A stretch of 63,471 nucleotides of DNA, counting the filler, from Octopus bimaculoides (Eukaryota), in NCBI RefSeq assembly GCF_001194135.2. It is 6 parts of 4 records of this genome, joined end to end, with 100 filler letters (N's around TTAATTAATTAA, not from the genome) between each part and the next. Parts side by side here need not be neighbours in the genome. Positions count along the whole stretch, not along the records: positions 56,034 to 61,199 come from NC_069003.1; 5 more parts are not named here. One strand, given 5' to 3'. The notes under the pieces are model-generated. The model was not told the DNA's origin. It worked only from the letters and a program-made list of their open reading frames with translations, and made no database searches. The position numbers were made by a program, and so were the translations under genes. Position 1 is the stretch's first letter, and every line of letters starts with the position of its first letter. This document shows positions 19,229 through 62,194 of the stretch, in pieces.

Positions 19229-19648
19229 TTTTGAAGTAAGACTTCAAATATGTTCTTATATCAAATTAATGTATATGTATGTGTAAAGTATCTACCTCTA
19301 CTGTATAGGGGCAGTCTGTATGTGGTCGTTTGACTTGCTAGAAACAGCAGCCAAATCTCCATACCATCACCTTATCGTCTCAAAAAAGAACTCTCTGGAT
19401 AATGTAGTCTAAGATACAATGTTTGAAAATATGATGAGATGGTCATGGCTAGAACGTCTTTGATCTAGATCTGCTGAATCAAGGCTGATCCAAGGGTAAA
19501 CAGCGACTGAGAGTTGACATCTGAAGTGATGCATTGCAATGAAGTTTCTTTTCCCAATTGAACTATTCTGCTAAACTTAGCCACCTTAACTTTTGGCCTA
19601 ATTGGGCTGGTTGATACTGACCGCTTCTGATGTTTGTATATATATATA

Positions 19649-22640: not shown

Positions 22641-22995
22641 CTTATGTGTATATATGTGCATGTGTGTGTGTATATATATATATTGATACACACATATACT
22701 CATTCTTAACTGTTTATTCATGTTAACTCTTTATTCATAACACACTTCAGTTCATTTCAACAATAGAAAAACAAAAACGAAAAACAGAAAAAAACTGTAC
22801 AAATGAAGTCAAACCAGAAATCTAATAAATGGTTGCCACACCTAAAGATTTTGTGGATGTCAACCTGAACTGAGAGAGCAATAATCAATCAAACTGTACA
22901 CAAGTCAACAGTTGGGGGGTACATAGCTGGAATTTTAAATTACTCTGTGTGGTAAACAGACTTGGAAAAAGTTTTTATGGGTGATATCATTTTAA

Positions 22996-23209
22996 CCCTC
23001 TAGTGTTCAGATTACTCCATCAAATGCAATGCTTATATATTCACCTTGTTTTGAATTAACCATGCATTATCTCATGGCCACAAGATTTCAATATGATTGT
23101 TTATTTTTATTTGATATTGTAAGGTGGATGTAAGAGGTTAGATCTGGCCAGTTGCAGCATAAAACGTAGAATATTTTGGCTGGATATGGCCAGTTTAAAT
23201 GCTAAAGGG
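22996..23209. mobile_element. piggyBac-type MITE
   Basis: TTAA|ccctctagtg ... gctaaaggg|TTAA: TTAA target duplication and CCC/GGG termini. Confidence 0.8.
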
Positions 23210-56033: not shown

Positions 56034-56115
56034 TAGTTAGGGTTAAGGTTTTAGGATTAGGGTTAGGATTTTAGGGTTAGGGTTATAGAAACGAAGGTTT
56101 TAGGGTTAGGGTTAT
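56034..56115 (+). repeat. Degenerate interstitial (TTAGGG)n-like tract
   Basis: Multiple ttaggg, ttaagg and ttagga units next to a gap. A shorter tract lies at 16981-17000. Confidence 0.8.
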
Positions 56116-56441
56116 GGAAACAAAGTCAAAAATGAAGAAATTGAGGGGGAAGTGGGGACGAAATATCAAAATGCCGATTTTTGGCAATTTTCCGGATTCT
56201 CCGTATCCGAAAACGGGGATTTTTGGCAAAAAAAAAAGAAAATAATAATACTAAATAAATAAAAATAAAACAAAATTCGGAGAAAATGGTGGAAAACGGG
56301 AGGGAGTCTTTCCGACAGTTATCCAAGGCACCGCGCAATAAGACAAAATTGAACCTGAAACTATTTGGTTGCAGACCAAGCTTCTTAACCTCATAACCAT
56401 ATCTGCACTCATAATTTAAAAAAAAATGTTTATTCTTTCAG

Positions 56442-56633
56442 GTACAGCACGGTGTTTCTTTGGAGGCGCAGTCAGAGCGAATAATTTAGAGATTCCCATT
56501 GAAGTAAAGCCTCTTCCAAGAGTTGAAATTACCCCCAACCCAATATATGTAGAGGAAGGAAAAAAAGTTGACGTGTCTTGTTCCATTACCAACAACGTGA
56601 ATGGCAAAGTCTATATCAATTCCACTAAAGCAG
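56442..56633 (+). CDS. Adhesion GPCR-like gene, internal exon: end of one Ig-like domain and first half of the next
   Basis: Acceptor tttattctttcag, donor GCAG|gtattg, 192 nt, phase 1-1. Translates GTARCFFGGAVRANNLEIPIEVKPLPRVEITPNPIYVEEGKKVDVSCSITNNVNGKVYINSTKA, with Ig A/A'/B strand pattern (P.V.ITP..I.V.EG..V.VSC). Confidence 0.88.
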
Positions 56634-56684
56634 GTATTGTACAGCTCTTATGTGTATTTTTGTGTGTGAGTGTGTAGTGTGTGT

Positions 56685-56767
<83 letters not shown>

Positions 56768-56870
56768 AAATCCCTGCGAAATCAATTTCAGCATATTTCT
56801 TCTTAAATAATATGTATGTATGTATGTATGTATGTATCTATCTATCTATCTATCTGTTTAAATAATAACA

Positions 56871-56906
<36 letters not shown>

Positions 56907-58111
56907 GCTCTGATTCAGTACCAGGCATTGGCTGTCATGGCTTCTAATTGTAAGTGATTGGAAGTGTTATCATGCACATTGTTTTGTCTTAGTATGAAAA
57001 AATGAGCTACAGCAAATATTCTGCTTAGTACCACAGATTTGCTTGTCTGTTGTTTGACTTTAACCAGTTGAGCTTGTCCCCTGGTGGCTGACAATATGTG
57101 CATCTCTGATCATGAGCAGGAGTAGTGGGGGAGCATCATAGTCACGTGTTGAAAGGAATTCTTTGGGGTTTGAATAATTCACCTCTAGAAACATGGATGT
57201 TTTGTTCAACATCTTTAAACGACACTTATTCAGGGACCTTTTGAGTGGGATGGGCTACTCGACATGAAGAAATTTCTAACTGGGTATCACCTGAAAAGTC
57301 ATGTGCTGTTTATCTTTATATGACGGGTAGTCACGATGGGTGTATTGGATTTCGTATATTTTATCCTGAAATGTGATGAAAAGTTGGCCAGCTTCAAAAC
57401 AATGGTGTTCAGGTGACAAAAGCAAAGTTTGAAGGGGATAGTAGTCATTTCCTTTGACTTCTAGACAGAAGCAAATAGGAAATAACACTTACTGACCAAA
57501 GAAAAAAGATAAATAAACAAATAAGTGAATTAAAAAATAACAATTTTGTCACACTGTTATTTCTTATGACTTGTACACACACACACACANNNNNNNNNNN
57601 NNNNNNNNNNNNNNNNNNNNNNNNNNNNNNNNNNNNNNNNNNNNNNNNNNNNNNNNNNNNNNNNNNNNNNNNNNNNNNNNNNNNNNNNNNNNNNNNNNNN
57701 NNNNNNNNNNNNNNNNNNNNNNNNNNNNNNNNNNNNNNNNNNNNNNNNNNNNNNNNNNNNNNNNNNNNNNNNNNNNNNNNNNNNNNNNNNNNNNNNNNNN
57801 NNNNNNNNNNNNNNNNNNNNNNNNNNNNNNNNNNNNNNNNNNNNNNNNNNNNNNNNNNNNNNNNNNNNNNNNNNNNNNNNNNNNNNNNNNNNNNNNNNNN
57901 NNNNNNNNNNNNNNNNNNNNNNNNNNNNNNNNNNNNNNNNNNNNNNNNNNNNNNNNNNNNNNNNNNNNNNNNNNNNNNNNNNNNNNNNNNNNNNNNNNNN
58001 NNNNNNNNNNNNNNNNNNNNNNNNNNNNNNNNNNNNNNNNNNNNNNNNNNNNNNNNNNNNNNNNNNNNNNTATATATATATATATATTATTTTTCTTTTT
58101 ATTCAACTCAG

Positions 58112-58240
58112 CTGAAGGAGGAAACACTGCTAAAATTACTTTAGACAGAGTAACAAAAGATCAGTCTATTATTTGCTACGCTGTAACTGATGATCAGAGA
58201 GGACCGATAAAGAAAGCAGTACTTGAATTTATTGCTCAAG
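58112..58240 (+). CDS. Adhesion GPCR-like gene, exon: second half of Ig-like domain
   Basis: Acceptor ttttctttttattcaactcag, donor CAAG|gtacgt, 129 nt, phase 1-1. Translates AEGGNTAKITLDRVTKDQSIICYAVTDDQRGPIKKAVLEFIAQ, supplying the F-strand Cys that would pair with VSC of the previous exon. Confidence 0.88.
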
Positions 58241-58847
58241 GTACGTTTTACATGCCTATCATTATGTTTTTTTCTTTTTACTCATTTATTCTTTTACTTG
58301 TTTCAGTCATTTGACTGCAGCCATGCTGGAGCACAACCTTAAGTGTTTCTCTTTAATCGTTTGTGTGTTTCAGTCATTGGATTGAGAGCATGCTGGGGCA
58401 GCGCCCTGAAGGGTTTTGGTCAAACACATCAATCCTAGTACTTGATAAGTTTTAATAATAATAAAATAAATGCGCCCTTTTAAAGCCTAGCCAGGCTCAT
58501 GGGCCCGGTTTCCCGATATCAATGGCGTGCATATGACGGTTTATTACTGTTTGGCACAGACCAGAAAACAGTTTGTTCAGGGAATTTAGAAACAAGGCCT
58601 CGAGTGTGGGATAGAATTATTAGTCCAGGAATATTACTTCTGGCTGGCAAGACACAGCAATGTTGAAACACCAGAGTCCTTTGCACTAATGAATCGGTCT
58701 TATTATGAACTCAAGTTCATCATGAAGGAGTTGTTCTGCAACGAAACACACCACTGATTAGCAAAATTACGTTCGAAACACCGAACGAGTATTAAGAATG
58801 AGTATGTATGTTATGGTTTCGATTCTTATATAATTTCTGTTCTGCAG

Positions 58848-58949
58848 GGGCGAAGATGTGCAGCAATTCAACAGACAATGACGGAAATAAATGGCCACAG
58901 ACAGCTTCTGGCAAAACAGCCAAGATTCTATGTGAAGGAGACTATACAG
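58848..58949 (+). CDS. Adhesion GPCR-like gene, exon: N-terminal half of HRM (HormR) domain
   Basis: Acceptor atttctgttctgcag, donor ACAG|gtattc, 102 nt, phase 1-1. Manual translation GAKMCSNSTDNDGNKWPQTASGKTAKILCEGDYT matches the C..G..WP.T..G..A...C pattern. The ORF track shows only a different frame here. Confidence 0.92.
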
Positions 58950-59274
58950 GTATTCATTGATTTATTATTTCACATTTCTGAACGGTTGCGCGCGCACACA
59001 CACACCATCTCTCTCTCGCACACACACACACACACACACACGTGTTTATGTATTCGTATATTCATATATAGTAAGAGACTCTCAAAATGAGAGGGTCAAC
59101 GCACATTCCACATTTTTGTCTTTTTTTCTGAACAAAATTTTAAATTTTCAATTCAACTGAAAAAATGGTTTGTTTCATGGCGTAAACAACCTGATAATCA
59201 ATTAAAGAAATAAGTGTTTGAAACAACTGTAGGTTCACTATATATACTTGTATGTATGTACATACATACATAAT

Positions 59275-59586
59275 ATATACGACAGGCGTCTTTCAGTTTC
59301 CGTTCACTAATTCCTCTTAAAAGGCGTTGGTCACCCCGAGGCTATAGTAGAAGACACTTGCCTATAGTAGAAGATACTTGCCCGGAACTATGTGGTTAGG
59401 AAGCAAGCGTCTTATTTCTTTACTGCCCACAAGGGACCAAACATAGAGGGGACATCGACCCCAGTGCGTAACTGGTACTTAATTTATCGACCCCGAAAGG
59501 ATGAAAAGCAAAGTCGATCTCGGCGGAATTCGAACTCAGAATGTAACGGCAGACGAAATACCGCTAAGCATTTTGCCCGGCGTGCT
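59275..59586 (-). mobile_element. Adjacent family A and family B SINE fragments
   Basis: Family A 5' half to about 59412, then a family B copy to 59586. Confidence 0.8.
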
Positions 59587-59994
59587 ACAGAAATGTTAAT
59601 GTAAAAATGGAAAACAGATTAGGTTTATCCGCGGAAAGAAAAGCCTACGGAAAAGACCACGGTAGCCTTGGGCAATAATGTCATGCAAAAANNNNNNNNN
59701 NNNNNNNNNNNNNNNNNNNNNNNNNNNNNNNNNNNNNNNNNNNNNNNNNNNNNNNNNNNNNNNNNNNNNNNNNNNNNNNNNNNNNNNNNNNNNNNNNNNN
59801 NNNNNNNNNNNNNNNNNNNNNNNNNNNNNNNNNNNNNNNNNNNNNNNNNNNNNNNNNNNNNNNNTAACGTTTCTGCCAGCTCACCGCCTTTTTATCACAT
59901 AGCCTACGCCTACCATAAACAACTCATCTGTGCAGTTTGTTGAACAAGAATTTGCAGAATCTCCAGAGGCTATCCAGTCATTAATACAAGTCGA

Positions 59995-60203
59995 AGGCGG
60001 CGAGAAACGTTAGCAAACCGGGCGAAATGCTTAGCTGTATTTCGCTAACTTTTACCTTCTGAGTTCAAATTCAGCCGAGGTCGACTTTGGCTTTCATCCT
60101 TTCGGGGTTGATAAATTAAGTACATGTTGCGTACTGAGGTCGATCTGATCCACTGACCCCCTCCCGCAAAATTTCGGGCCTTGTGCTTAGAGTAGAAAAG
60201 AAT
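59995..60203 (+). mobile_element. SINE family B, full length
   Basis: Family B consensus, inverted relative to the 59415-59586 copy. Confidence 0.88.
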
Positions 60204-60763
60204 ACTATTACAAGTCGGTCATTTAACATTGCAATTTGTTAACAATAGTGTCTTGGATTTCCAACAGGCATATTACTGGTTTATTGCATGTCTACTGAAG
60301 AATGTAACAAAGGAGTTTCAGTGAGTCGGAGCAGAACAAATATCACTGGGGACTTCGTTAAGAAAGTACCTGTATATTGACTTTTTGCCAGGTTTTTAAG
60401 GTATTTTTTGGCCTCTTTTAGGTAGCGGAGAGGACCGAGTAGTGGTGATAAATGCCTATAGCTGTCCTCTACCACATATTTACTTTTGTGACTGCGGTCG
60501 ACCTGAGATTCCAGGCTGTAAGACTGAACCCGAAATCATATGATTGAAAAGTGAATTATTTACAACACAGACAGGCTTTTGAACTGATTAATTTTGATTC
60601 TTGCAAGTGTCGATTAAAAACAATGCTTGCCAAACAAAAAGCAAAATAAAAAGAATAAAGTTCTAGTGCTCCCCCCGACTCCAATCAAAAAACAAAAAAG
60701 TTTAAAAAAATAAAATAAAGGAATCGGCAATCTCATTATTATTCTTCATGTTTTCCGTTGCAG

Positions 60764-60858
60764 GAATGATTTCTAGATATTGTGCAGAAGATAAAACGTG
60801 GGGCGATCCGAACAAAGAGCATTGTATCAGACGTGTTTTCATCGATATTATCAATAAA
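60764..60858 (+). CDS. Adhesion GPCR-like gene, exon: C-terminal half of HRM domain and probable start of GAIN helices
   Basis: Acceptor ttttccgttgcag, donor AAA|gtaagt, 95 nt, phase 1-0. Translates GMISRYCAEDKTWGDPNKEHCIRRVFIDIINK, matching G...R.C....W..P....C. Confidence 0.92.
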
Positions 60859-60885
60859 GTAAGTGAAATTTTGCTACGATGTTAT

Positions 60886-61050
60886 AGGCGTAGGAGTGGC
60901 TGTGTGGTAAGTAGCTTGCTTACGAACCACATGGTTCCGGGTTCAGTCCCACTGGGTGTCACCTTGGGCAAGTGTCTTATACTATGGCTTCGGGCCGACC
61001 AAAGCCTTGTGAGTGGATTTGGTAGACGGAAACTGAAAGACCCGTCGTAT
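60886..61050 (+). mobile_element. SINE family A, 5' half (young-looking copy)
   Basis: aggcgtaggagtggctgtgtggtaagtagc...ggttccgggttcagtcccact...gacccgtcg. Confidence 0.9.
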
Positions 61051-61053
61051 ATA

Positions 61054-61093
<40 letters not shown>

Positions 61094-61096
<3 letters not shown>

Positions 61097-61186
61097 TAGC
61101 AGAAATACCCGGCGTTGCCCGGGTTAAAGAGAATAATGAAATCTAAAAACGCCGTCTAGACTACGCATCATCTTTATATATAGAGA
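61094..61186. mobile_element. Short Helentron/HINE-like element
   Basis: tactagcagaaatacccggcgttgcccgggt (GC hairpin near one end) ... tctttatatatagag. Confidence 0.55.
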
Positions 61187-62194
61187 TGTATATACACACN
61201 NNNNNNNNNNNNNNNNNNNNNNNNNNNNNNNNNNNNNNNNNNNTTAATTAATTAANNNNNNNNNNNNNNNNNNNNNNNNNNNNNNNNNNNNNNNNNNNNA
61301 TATAGCTCGCTCCGGCCAGTCATGGTATTAGCTGTCAGTAGCCAAAGAATCAACTCAAACCAGCAACAGGCATGCAGGCAGACAGGCAGACAGACACATA
61401 CTTCACTAGCAGTGAGCACTTTCACTTCTGACAGCTAATAGCATGATAGTGCCTACCCGAGAACTACGTTAAGGGTAAACGTGTCTGTGGAGTGCTCAGC
61501 CACTTGCACGTTAATTTCACGAGCAGGCTGTTCCGTTGATTGGATCAACTGGAATCCTCGACGTCGTAAGCGACAGAGTGCCAACAACAACAATAAGTAC
61601 ATTATAAACAAAGAATGAAAATTCCTATAAAATCGCAAAAATACAAAACTACTTTTATGCTTAATATTTTTAGAAGTGTTTTTTTCCTCCAGAATATTCC
61701 TGTGGAAGAACTCTTTCATTTGAGTTCAAATAACATTATTTTTCTCTTAAAAAGCGAAAACATTTTGATTTCTTATAATTATCACCATTTTCCCCTCACT
61801 GAAAGCAAAACAACAGTTTCGTAGCTAATATTTTTTATTTATAAAATTTCCCCCACACCTTTAGAAAACAAGGCTTTCACATCCTTAGAAAACGGGAGAA
61901 AATGGTTAGCTCACTACAACAAAAGATCGAACACGTACTTCTCAATCTCCAACAAAATCATATTGTACTGTTAAACTAAGCGACATATGACTGTAAATGC
62001 CGTCTTTTATAATGTCAAATATCTTAACATGACAAAAATATTTTAATTTGTTAAAATGATCACTTTTCTATGACTTAAAAGCACGTTGCAGTTTTTGTAG
62101 CTAATATATATTAACGAGATTTTCACAAGATTTATCTCATACAGCTCTTTCATTTGAACACAGCTATTGTATAGTTTACTTAAATATTGCTCTC

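What the first reader, a model, noticed from the sequence alone, without database searches (positions are those of the whole stretch)
56442..60858. Ig-Ig-HRM adhesion GPCR ectodomain reconstructed from four exons
Seen: four exons with canonical splice sites and matching phases (1-1, 1-1, 1-1, 1-0) splice into a compact Ig domain (about 42 aa between cysteines, no canonical Trp) followed by C-x10-W-x12-C-x11-C-x5-W-x7-C. Known: this Cys/Trp pattern is the HRM domain that precedes GAIN in adhesion GPCRs, and Ig plus HRM occurs in ADGRA and ADGRF-type receptors. Inference: a multi-Ig cephalopod adhesion GPCR whose GAIN and 7TM exons lie beyond the window, possibly with a lineage-specific architecture.
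Basis: partly seen in the sequence, partly recalled or inferred. Interest (0 to 1): 0.7.

Follow-up and report, generated by a model that had tools for sequence, protein, structure and literature searches.

The report
Octopus adhesion GPCR ectodomain exons
These four exons are a real, correctly spliced piece of an Octopus bimaculoides adhesion G-protein-coupled receptor gene (end of one Ig domain, a second Ig domain, and a hormone-receptor-motif domain); the gene is already in the public annotation as a truncated 'uncharacterized protein', and its full-length Octopus vulgaris counterpart has the expected GAIN, cleavage-site and seven-helix membrane parts, so the finding is correct but ordinary.

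Summary
Four AG/GT-bounded exons (56442-56633, 58112-58240, 58848-58949, 60764-60858) have phases 1-1, 1-1, 1-1, 1-0. They join into an open 172-aa peptide with exactly the stated C-x10-W-x12-C-x11-C-x5-W-x7-C pattern. Pfam HRM scores above its curated cut-off. The Ig part is below threshold by sequence, but an AlphaFold model matches only Ig-superfamily structures. The peptide is 100% identical to residues 7-178 of RefSeq XP_052832066.1 (Octopus bimaculoides LOC106871914). That model is cut off by assembly gaps and reads into intron at both ends. Both N gaps lie in introns. The almost gap-free O. sinensis ortholog has the same four exons, same lengths and splice sites, with no indel, so no coding sequence is hidden relative to that model. 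GAIN exons lie downstream on the O. bimaculoides chromosome. The O. vulgaris ortholog (CAI9739306.1, 1425 aa) reads mucin-like region, SEA-like region, Ig, Ig, HRM, GAIN, GPS (HL/T), 7tm_2. The adhesion GPCR reading is supported. GPS and 7TM exons of the O. bimaculoides copy itself were not seen. The architecture recurs in gastropods (SEA included) and, from Ig onward, in bivalves, so it is not cephalopod-specific. It is a new member of a known kind, of low interest.

The parts
56034..56441 (+). 3' end of the intron that precedes E1. It includes degenerate telomere-like (TTAGGG-type) repeats at 56037-56125. It also holds the ATG at 56426 that the RefSeq model uses as a false start by reading through the E1 acceptor.
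   Evidence: The stretch aligns to O. sinensis intron sequence at 85%.
56442..56633 (+). Exon E1 (192 nt, phase 1-1). It encodes the last two strands of Ig domain 1 (TARCFFGG...IEV) and the first half of Ig domain 2, up to and past Cys46. It corresponds to exon 5 of the O. sinensis model.
   Evidence: 94% nt identity to L002 18149-18340, identical splice sites; strand pattern.
56634..58111 (+). Intron 1, with an assembly gap at 57590-58070. Microsatellites (TG)51, (TATG)11 and (AAT)15 lie just after the donor.
   Evidence: The O. sinensis intron is 2.5 kb and its gene model has no exon there.
58112..58240 (+). Exon E2 (129 nt, phase 1-1). It encodes the second half of Ig domain 2 (strands E, F, G, with Cys85 in IICYAV).
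58241..58847 (+). Intron 2 (607 nt, no gap).
58848..58949 (+). Exon E3 (102 nt, phase 1-1). It encodes the first half of the HRM domain (C111, W122, C135).
58950..60763 (+). Intron 3, with an assembly gap at 59692-59864. The gap is flanked by an inverted pair of repeat copies, 59454-59587 and 60011-60144 (134 nt, 84% complementary).
60764..60858 (+). Exon E4 (95 nt, phase 1-0). It encodes the second half of the HRM domain (G141, C147, W153, C161) and the start of the helix that leads into GAIN (RRVFIDIINK).
   Evidence: (aligns to the HormR-GAIN of CELSR1 and ADGRB2).
60859..61199 (+). Start of intron 4. It holds a dispersed repeat copy at about 60882-61098 (10 or more copies in the 38-kb O. 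sinensis locus) and a (TA)24 microsatellite. The RefSeq model translates this stretch as a false C-terminus ending at the TAA at 61144-61146.

Best explanation
The piece is an internal segment of one Octopus bimaculoides gene for an adhesion (class B2) GPCR. It lies on chromosome CM046623.1 at about 10.09 Mb and is annotated as LOC106871914.

The four exons encode the middle of the extracellular region. They cover the tail of Ig domain 1, a complete short seven-strand Ig domain 2 that keeps its disulfide but lacks the core Trp, and an HRM/HormR domain with four invariant Cys and two Trp.

The full domain order is read from the O. vulgaris ortholog. It is a Thr/Ser/Pro-rich mucin-like stalk, a SEA-like domain carrying a GSVVA motif, Ig, Ig, HRM, GAIN with a canonical GPS (CSCTHL/TNFAVLINP), a seven-helix 7tm_2 domain, and a cytoplasmic tail.

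What is shown here is the exon structure, the domain identities, the orthology, and the GAIN exons downstream in O. bimaculoides.

The mechanism is inferred from established knowledge of adhesion GPCRs. The HRM packs against GAIN as a rigid unit. The Ig domains and the glycosylated stalk project a binding surface away from the membrane. GAIN cleaves itself at HL/T and holds the TNFAVL tethered agonist. Ligand binding or mechanical pull on the N-terminal fragment then exposes that agonist to the 7TM domain and starts G-protein signalling. The SEA-like domain may provide a second, force-sensitive cleavage point.
For: Exon structure. The peptide is a 100% match over all 172 aa to NCBI XP_052832066.1, which uses the same introns.

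Domains in the piece. HRM scores above the curated cut-off. The Ig fold is supported by an AF2 model with pLDDT 82.6 and by Foldseek, whose list is almost entirely Ig-superfamily ectodomains (PTP-delta, titin Z1Z2, MDGA1, ICAM-1, MAG), including all eight matches with E <= 0.001.

Ortholog in O. sinensis. XP_029650223.1 is 81% identical, with the same exon lengths and splice sites and dN/dS 0.45. It carries GAIN with E 2.5e-14.

One gene across the gaps. The piece is L001 9609-14774, bounded by N gaps. An upstream SEA-like exon (L001 1634-1746) and downstream GAIN exons lie on the same strand and are collinear with the orthologs. The junction between exons 11 and 12 is phase-compatible. The composite GAIN peptide gives E 1.1e-17.

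Full-length ortholog. O. vulgaris CAI9739306.1 sits in the same 90% identity cluster as the O. sinensis protein. It has HRM, GAIN (E 1.7e-24), GPS (E 1.2e-13) and 7tm_2 (E 9.2e-41). The window peptide matches its residues 596-767 at 79.7% identity.

Wider family. All collinear distant relatives (20-29% identity) are molluscan proteins with Ig-HRM-GAIN(-GPS-7tm_2).

Solved structures. HRM plus GAIN align to the solved HormR-GAIN structures of CELSR1, ADGRB2, ADGRF1 and BAI3.
Against: The GPS and 7TM exons of the O. bimaculoides copy itself were not seen. The 10 kb downstream is 50% N, and a profile search for GAIN-B/7TM proteins found none on that chromosome.

No transcript-derived protein of this gene turned up in the 5.8-billion or 1.84-billion protein collections, so no expression evidence was available here.

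The Ig and SEA assignments are below Pfam's cut-offs by sequence alone: Ig_3 at 15 bits, ICAM_N at 17 bits, SEA at 13.5 bits.

dN/dS in the HRM half is 0.88, though this rests on only 28 substitutions.

The O. vulgaris model starts without a recognisable signal peptide, so even that model may be incomplete at its N-terminus.
Confidence: 0.9

Rival explanations
1. The O. bimaculoides copy is a truncated or decaying gene. It would be a pseudogene, or a secreted protein made only of the ectodomain with no 7TM, even though its relatives in O. vulgaris and O. sinensis are complete receptors.
For: The 7TM and GPS exons were not found for this species. Both annotated models in O. bimaculoides and O. 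sinensis end by reading into an intron. No transcript-derived proteins were found. The HRM half has dN/dS 0.88.
Against: All eight O. bimaculoides exons that can be seen are open, in compatible phases, and have intact AG/GT sites. Overall dN/dS is 0.45, and every scaffold Cys, Trp and Gly is conserved. The truncations coincide exactly with N gaps. In O. sinensis the apparently missing 7TM turned up on an unplaced 11-kb contig, so there the break is an assembly artefact, not biology.
Confidence: 0.07
2. The Cys/Trp module is not an adhesion GPCR HormR. It would instead be the hormone-binding ectodomain of a class B1 (secretin-type) receptor, or a Sushi/CCP repeat of a non-GPCR protein.
For: Pfam HRM is the same family in B1 receptors. 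CRF receptor ectodomains appear as very weak matches (E about 0.9). Sushi gives a sub-threshold hit (15.3 bits against a cut-off of 20.7).
Against: GAIN exons follow the HRM directly in three Octopus species, whereas B1 receptors have no GAIN. HRM scores above its cut-off and Sushi below. The best structural-sequence matches are HormR-GAIN units of adhesion GPCRs.
Confidence: 0.02
3. The spliced reading frame is a chance product of AG/GT sites in repeat-rich non-coding DNA.
For: The piece is rich in microsatellites and dispersed repeats. Part of the RefSeq model is indeed translated repeat sequence.
Against: The exons are conserved in length, phase and splice sites in O. sinensis. There is a domain hit above threshold. 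There are 121 significant homologs. The predicted fold is confident.
Confidence: 0.01

Closest known systems
Octopus vulgaris CAI9739306.1 ('G protein-coupled receptor B1-like', 1425 aa), Octopus sinensis XP_029650223.1 (LOC115223690) and XP_029654167.2 (partial 7TM)
   Same: These are orthologs. They are 80-81% identical over the 172-aa window peptide. The four exons have identical lengths and splice sites in O. sinensis. The domain order around the peptide is the same.
   Different: The O. bimaculoides copy is visible only in pieces between assembly gaps. Its mucin-like region, most of SEA, Ig1, one GAIN exon, and GPS/7TM were not seen. The automatic name 'B1-like' is not backed by any thrombospondin repeats.
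Molluscan Ig-Ig-HRM-GAIN-GPS-7tm_2 receptors, for example Patella vulgata XP_055954372.1 (with SEA), Haliotis asinina XP_067674839.1, Mytilus californianus XP_052089256.1 and Argonauta hians GAB1606681.1
   Same: They align collinearly over Ig-Ig-HRM-GAIN, and over SEA in Patella and Haliotis. The same ten Cys, Trp and Gly positions are invariant.
   Different: Identity is only 20-29% across the two comparisons made, the 172-aa peptide alignment and the longer Ig-to-GAIN alignments. Most non-cephalopod relatives keep the canonical Ig Trp that the Octopus proteins and two other relatives (the Argonauta one and one of unknown source) lack. The N-terminal modules differ (SRCR, FN3, LDLa, LRR).
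Human ADGRF5/GPR116 (and ADGRF1/GPR110)
   Same: The architecture is similar: a SEA domain with a GSVV-type autoproteolysis motif, then Ig repeats (F5), then GAIN-7TM. The SEA and motif point is from PMC6954182. The ADGRF1 chain aligns to the octopus-family proteins from the second half of HRM onward.
   Different: By sequence the ortholog's GAIN/7TM scores far better against ADGRL3 (E 5.5e-70) and ADGRD1 (1.1e-57) than against ADGRF1 (1.9e-40). No phylogeny was made. The octopus SEA is below Pfam's threshold.
Human ADGRL3 (latrophilin-3) and ADGRD1
   Same: They give the best sequence match among solved structures for the GAIN-GPS-7TM of the ortholog. HormR-GAIN-7TM is the ancient core layout of the family (PMC13197933).
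   Different: Latrophilins carry lectin and olfactomedin domains, and ADGRD1 carries a pentraxin-like domain. Neither has Ig or SEA.
Human ADGRA2/3 (GPR124/125) and ADGRG6/G4
   Same: ADGRA has Ig directly before HormR-GAIN. ADGRG6 and G4 have SEA-HormR-GAIN (PMC6954182, PMC13197933).
   Different: No LRR (ADGRA) or CUB/PTX (ADGRG6) modules are present in the ortholog. The Ig pair sits between SEA and HormR.

Membership tests
HRM / HormR domain (Pfam PF02793) | A profile score above the curated gathering threshold | tested here: met
   29.3 bits (E 1.2e-6) for the E3+E4 peptide and 26.4 bits for the whole 172 aa, against a cut-off of 26.2.
HRM / HormR domain (Pfam PF02793) | The conserved Cys and Trp scaffold | tested here: met
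   C111, W122, C135, G141, C147, W153 and C161 are invariant in all 12 aligned relatives. They are unchanged between O. bimaculoides and O. sinensis.
Immunoglobulin-superfamily domain | A sequence profile match above threshold | tested here: not met
   ICAM_N 17.2 bits (cut-off 21), Ig_3 15 bits (cut-off 30), Ig_2 13.6, V-set 13.1. The canonical core Trp is absent (YIN in its place).
Immunoglobulin-superfamily domain | A two-sheet beta sandwich with the B-F disulfide | tested here: met
   The AF2 model (pLDDT 82.6) has seven strands between residues 27 and 104. C46 and C85 are invariant. The Foldseek list is almost entirely IgSF ectodomains, including all eight matches with E <= 0.001. This rests on a prediction, not a solved structure.
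Adhesion GPCR (class B2) | A GAIN domain | tested here: met
   O. bimaculoides exons downstream of the piece, joined to O. sinensis exon 9, give PF16489 E 1.1e-17 over profile positions 4-155 of 210. The domain is complete in the O. vulgaris ortholog (E 1.7e-24). The last third of GAIN was not seen in O. bimaculoides.
Adhesion GPCR (class B2) | A GPS motif with the H-L/T cleavage site and tethered agonist | tested here: inconclusive
   It is present in the O. vulgaris ortholog (CSCTHLTNFAVLINP; PF01825 E 1.2e-13).
Adhesion GPCR (class B2) | A 7tm_2 seven-helix domain after GAIN | tested here: inconclusive
   It is present in the O. vulgaris ortholog (E 9.2e-41) and on an unplaced O. sinensis contig (E 7.4e-40). 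A profile search found no such protein on the O. bimaculoides chromosome. That search scores only 8000 word-sharing candidates and depends on the gene having been called.
ADGRF subfamily (GPR116-like) | A SEA domain with a GSVV-type motif N-terminal to the Ig repeats | tested here: inconclusive
   The octopus SEA-like region scores only 13.5 bits (E 0.083). It does contain GSVVA, and it is collinear with the Patella relative whose SEA passes threshold (E 4.9e-7). In O. bimaculoides only the first SEA exon is visible.
ADGRF subfamily (GPR116-like) | A 7TM that groups with ADGRF | tested here: not met
   The ortholog scores ADGRL3 5.5e-70, ADGRD1 1.1e-57, ADGRG6 2.2e-44, ADGRE5 2.2e-42 and ADGRF1 1.9e-40. 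The same order holds for relatives. These are pairwise scores only, and no tree was built.
ADGRA subfamily (GPR124/125-like) | Leucine-rich repeats N-terminal to Ig-HormR | tested here: not met
   No LRR hit in the full-length ortholog. The N-terminus is a mucin-like repeat followed by a SEA-like region.
ADGRB subfamily (BAI-like, the automatic NCBI name) | Thrombospondin type 1 repeats before HormR | tested here: not met
   No TSP1 hit in the ortholog. The TSP1/ADAMTS gene downstream in O. sinensis is a separate gene that lies beyond a 100-N scaffold join.

The most novel reading that the evidence does not exclude
Molluscs may carry an old clade of adhesion GPCRs that joins an ADGRF5-like ectodomain to a latrophilin/ADGRD-like 7TM. 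The ectodomain is a mucin stalk, a cleavable SEA, two Ig domains and HormR-GAIN. In that case the SEA-Ig layout, usually treated as a vertebrate ADGRF trait, would either predate the protostome-deuterostome split or have been assembled twice by exon shuffling of phase 1-1 modules. Within that clade the Octopus gene would be a fast-evolving branch. It has at most 29% identity to any annotated non-Octopus relative found here, including one from Argonauta. It has lost the Ig core Trp, and its HRM surface is changing at close to the neutral rate.
Probability: 0.3. Interest if true: 0.4.

Novelty: new member of a known kind. Interest (0 to 1): 0.2.

Why it matters
The value is mainly in annotation. 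Two RefSeq models in O. bimaculoides are pieces of one adhesion GPCR gene broken by assembly gaps: the upstream 407-aa model and LOC106871914. In O. sinensis, LOC115223690 and the partial 'B1-like' 7TM on an unplaced contig are likewise pieces of one gene. All of these models contain translated intron. Merging them would correct the GPCR counts used in studies of octopus receptor expansions (PMC6408891, PMC6900090). Biologically this adds one more example of the modular, phase 1-1 exon construction of adhesion GPCR ectodomains. It also gives a molluscan receptor with two potential self-cleaving domains (SEA-like and GAIN). It does not open a new question.

Tried and rejected
Word-indexed searches. 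(1) A search with the 172-aa peptide returned only the RefSeq model itself. With the O. sinensis protein it returned only the two Octopus models, and the upstream 407-aa O. bimaculoides model did not appear.

Search for the 7TM. (2) A profile of GAIN-B/GPS/7TM from six molluscan relatives (A1) was searched in order to find the downstream O. bimaculoides gene model, using chromosome length as the filter. It gave 105 hits. None was on CM046623.1 or CM016881.1. The only O. bimaculoides hit (P0164, 'ADGRD1') is on another chromosome.

Search of the flanks. (3) A tblastn of 119 relatives (the 121 hits less the two Octopus proteins) against both 10-kb flanks found no GPS or 7TM exons. (4) Exon 12 of O. 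bimaculoides has no counterpart in the 5 kb that follow exon 11 in O. sinensis, before the scaffold join. That stretch is microsatellite-rich and contains a palindromic segment.

Other checks on the piece. (5) An Rfam scan gave only sub-threshold hits on simple repeats, and there are no tRNA genes. (6) The ORF list shows no other credible coding ORF on either strand.

Readings rejected. The Sushi and class B1 readings of the Cys/Trp module were considered and rejected. The ADGRB name given by NCBI was rejected because the ortholog has no TSP1 repeats.

Full report
**What is in the piece.**

The usable stretch is window 56034-61199. It is AT-rich, repeat-laden animal DNA with two N gaps.

Four segments bounded by polypyrimidine-AG and GT were translated and joined:
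- E1, 56442-56633
- E2, 58112-58240
- E3, 58848-58949
- E4, 60764-60858

Only one frame is open, and it runs for 172 codons (TARCFF...IDIINK).

The Ig cysteines are 38 residues apart, not about 42.

**Domain identity.**

Pfam HRM (PF02793) scores 29.3 bits (E 1.2e-6) on the E3+E4 peptide. Its curated cut-off is 26.2. Sushi is below its cut-off.

The E1+E2 part gives only sub-threshold Ig hits (ICAM_N 17 bits, Ig_3 15 bits).

I therefore aligned the peptide with eleven collinear relatives and predicted a structure from that alignment. The model has mean pLDDT 82.6. It contains:
- an N-terminal beta hairpin, which is the F-G strands of a preceding Ig domain
- a seven-strand sandwich between residues 27 and 104
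- the small HRM module
- a C-terminal helix

Foldseek against the PDB returned almost only Ig-superfamily ectodomains, including all eight matches with E <= 0.001 (PTP-delta, titin Z1Z2, MDGA1, ICAM-1, MAG).

The piece therefore holds the tail of Ig1, a full but compact Ig2 without the core Trp, and an HRM. In the alignment the Trp is present in most non-cephalopod relatives. It is missing in the two Octopus sequences and in two other relatives, the one from Argonauta hians and one of unknown source.

**It is an annotated gene, but a broken model.**

The peptide is 100% identical to residues 7-178 of XP_052832066.1, 'uncharacterized protein LOC106871914 [Octopus bimaculoides]', 273 aa.

That model starts at an ATG inside the E1 polypyrimidine tract (window 56426). 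It runs through the E4 donor into a dispersed repeat and a TA microsatellite, ending at a TAA at 61144-61146. Both of its ends are therefore translated intron.

The chromosome context (L001 = CM046623.1:10079425-10104145) explains why. The piece is L001 9609-14774. It is bounded by N gaps of 4595 and 2803 bases. 42% of the 24.7-kb locus is N.

**Gap test.**

The two gaps inside the finding fall in introns 1 and 3.

The O. sinensis ortholog (XP_029650223.1, 484 aa) lies in locus L002, which has a single 100-N gap far downstream. Its four corresponding exons are L002 18149-18340, 20839-20967, 22516-22617 and 24645-24739. They have the same lengths and the same acceptor and donor sequences, and the proteins align without an indel.

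Nothing coding is hidden in the gaps relative to that model, and the frame is continuous across them.

Exon nucleotide identity is 83-94%. Overall dN/dS is 0.45, made up of 0.28 for the Ig part and 0.88 for the HRM part. The HRM figure rests on only 6 synonymous and 22 non-synonymous changes. All scaffold residues are unchanged.

**The rest of the gene.**

The O. sinensis model has eleven exons. They encode a SEA-like start, Ig1, Ig2, HRM and GAIN subdomain A (Pfam GAIN E 2.5e-14).

In O. bimaculoides the following exons lie on the same strand, in collinear order:
- The first SEA-like exon, at L001 1634-1746. It is the last exon of an upstream 407-aa model, which also reads through a gtgagt donor.
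- GAIN exons at L001 18215-18286 and about 19338-19443.
- A further exon at 22868-22999 (AVVVQKVEKEKDVVFPGENKK...), with good splice sites and a phase that fits exon 11.

Joining O. sinensis exon 9 to these three O. bimaculoides exons raises the GAIN score to 64.6 bits (E 1.1e-17) and extends the match to profile position 155 of 210.

The SEA C-terminal exons, the Ig1 exon and GAIN exon 9 fall in N gaps.

**The 7TM question.**

My own attempt to find the 7TM failed. A profile of GAIN-B/7TM from six relatives found no protein on either Octopus chromosome, and tblastn of the flanks found nothing.

The answer came from the 90% identity cluster of the O. sinensis protein. It also holds CAI9739306.1 from O. 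vulgaris (1425 aa) and a 258-aa O. sinensis fragment on an unplaced 11-kb contig.

The O. vulgaris protein has this domain layout:
- HRM at 712-757
- a complete GAIN at 781-979 (E 1.7e-24)
- GPS at 1006-1050 (E 1.2e-13), with the canonical CSCTHL/TNFAVLINP
- 7tm_2 at 1061-1300 (E 9.2e-41)
- about 415 N-terminal residues that are 31% Thr, 18% Ser and 10% Pro, in tandem repeats

It is 97.7% identical to the O. sinensis protein over 469 aa. It contains the window peptide at residues 596-767 (79.7% identity), and it contains the O. bimaculoides exon 12 peptide directly after IMTENL, as predicted. The O. sinensis fragment is the 7TM of the same gene, 96.8% identical to the O. vulgaris protein over 251 aa.

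For O. bimaculoides itself the GPS and 7TM exons remain unseen.

**Relatives and subfamily.**

A full scan of 1.84 billion representative proteins gave 121 hits. Those that align across the whole peptide are adhesion GPCRs. Nine of the ten I looked up are molluscan; the tenth comes from unnamed transcript-like contigs. The named ones come from Patella, Haliotis, Mytilus, Mizuhopecten, Ylistrum, Sinanodonta and Argonauta. Identity is only 20-29% across the two comparisons made, with the 172-aa peptide and with the longer Ig-to-GAIN alignments. They have Ig-Ig-HRM-GAIN-GPS-7tm_2 with variable N-terminal modules. The Patella protein also has a SEA that passes threshold.

The architecture is therefore molluscan, not cephalopod-specific.

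The octopus SEA-like region is sub-threshold (E 0.083). It does carry GSVVA, the kind of motif that drives SEA autoproteolysis in MUC1, ADGRF1 and ADGRF5 (PMC6954182).

In layout the protein resembles ADGRF5 (SEA, Ig repeats) combined with the SEA-HormR-GAIN arrangement of ADGRG6 and G4 (PMC6954182, PMC13197933). By sequence, the ortholog's GAIN/7TM matches ADGRL3 (5.5e-70) and ADGRD1 (1.1e-57) much better than ADGRF1 (1.9e-40). Two relatives behave the same way.

NCBI's 'B1-like' label has no support, because there are no TSP1 repeats. No tree was built, so subfamily placement stays open.

**How it most likely works.**

What is shown here is the domain identities and their order.

The mechanism is inferred from what is established for adhesion GPCRs (PMC3321182, PMC13197933). 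HormR and GAIN form a rigid membrane-proximal unit. GAIN cleaves at HL/T and retains the TNFAVL tethered agonist. The Ig pair and the glycosylated stalk present a binding surface. Ligand engagement or pulling force releases or repositions the N-terminal fragment, so that the agonist activates the 7TM. The SEA-like domain may add a second force-sensitive cleavage point.

The ligand, the tissue and the G-protein coupling are all unknown.

**Context in the literature.**

[quoted passage not shown] O. bimaculoides sequences were part of a reclassification that found subfamilies outside the vertebrate scheme (PMC6900090). Those surveys start from 7TM-containing models. A gene that is split like this one would therefore be missed or miscounted.

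**Verdict.**

This is a correctly read fragment of an ordinary, already-annotated (though badly modelled) adhesion GPCR gene. It is a new member of a known kind, and interest is low.

Noticed in passing
proteins P0003-P0008 found (not in the window): After the Octopus orthologs, the best-scoring matches to the octopus HRM are proteins built of long tandem arrays of HRM domains. One is a 1783-aa Blastocystis sp. protein (KAK8799527.1) with 11 Pfam HRM stretches (E 2e-73) plus Big_5 and fn3. Several others are unnamed proteins from ENA assemblies with 8-12 matched stretches each, one ending in a transmembrane segment. No paper in the searched library pairs Blastocystis with 'hormone receptor domain'. 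HRM arrays in a stramenopile gut protist seem worth a look of their own.
   Followed up: partly
window 56037-56125: Degenerate telomere-like repeats (TTAGGG / TTAGGGTTAAGATTTTAGGA units) sit inside the intron upstream of E1, at the very edge of the piece next to a 4.6-kb assembly gap.
   Followed up: no
window 59454-59587 and 60011-60144: An inverted pair of copies of one dispersed repeat family (134 nt, 84% complementary, 423 nt apart) brackets the assembly gap in intron 3. It may be why the assembler failed there. The same family has many copies in the O. sinensis locus.
   Followed up: partly
window 60882-61098 and 56426-56441: The RefSeq protein XP_052832066.1 includes about 95 residues translated from a dispersed repeat and a TA microsatellite, and 6 residues from the E1 acceptor tract. 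The upstream 407-aa model and the O. sinensis model also end by reading through donors.
   Followed up: yes
L002 31260-32100 and 33506-33605: In O. sinensis the sequence after GAIN exon 11 contains a roughly 800-bp near-perfect palindrome and long microsatellites, followed by a 100-N scaffold join. The next gene is ADAMTS-like. The receptor's 7TM sits on an unplaced 11,110-bp contig. This looks like a local misassembly that splits the gene.
   Followed up: partly
L001 4164-5012 (- strand) and L002 29272-29544 (- strand): Transposon remnants lie in the introns. One is a 283-aa ORF with a YLDD reverse-transcriptase-like motif, abutting the 4.6-kb gap in O. bimaculoides. The other is a 90-aa ORF resembling the C-terminus of a mariner/Tc1-type transposase (PYSPDIAPSDF) in O. 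sinensis. Neither was searched against a domain library.
   Followed up: no
window 58848-60858 (HRM exons) compared with L002 22516-24739: Between O. bimaculoides and O. sinensis the HRM exons show 22 non-synonymous and 6 synonymous changes (dN/dS 0.88). The Ig exons show 0.28. Every Cys, Trp and Gly of the scaffold is unchanged. There are too few sites to tell relaxed constraint from positive selection.
   Followed up: partly
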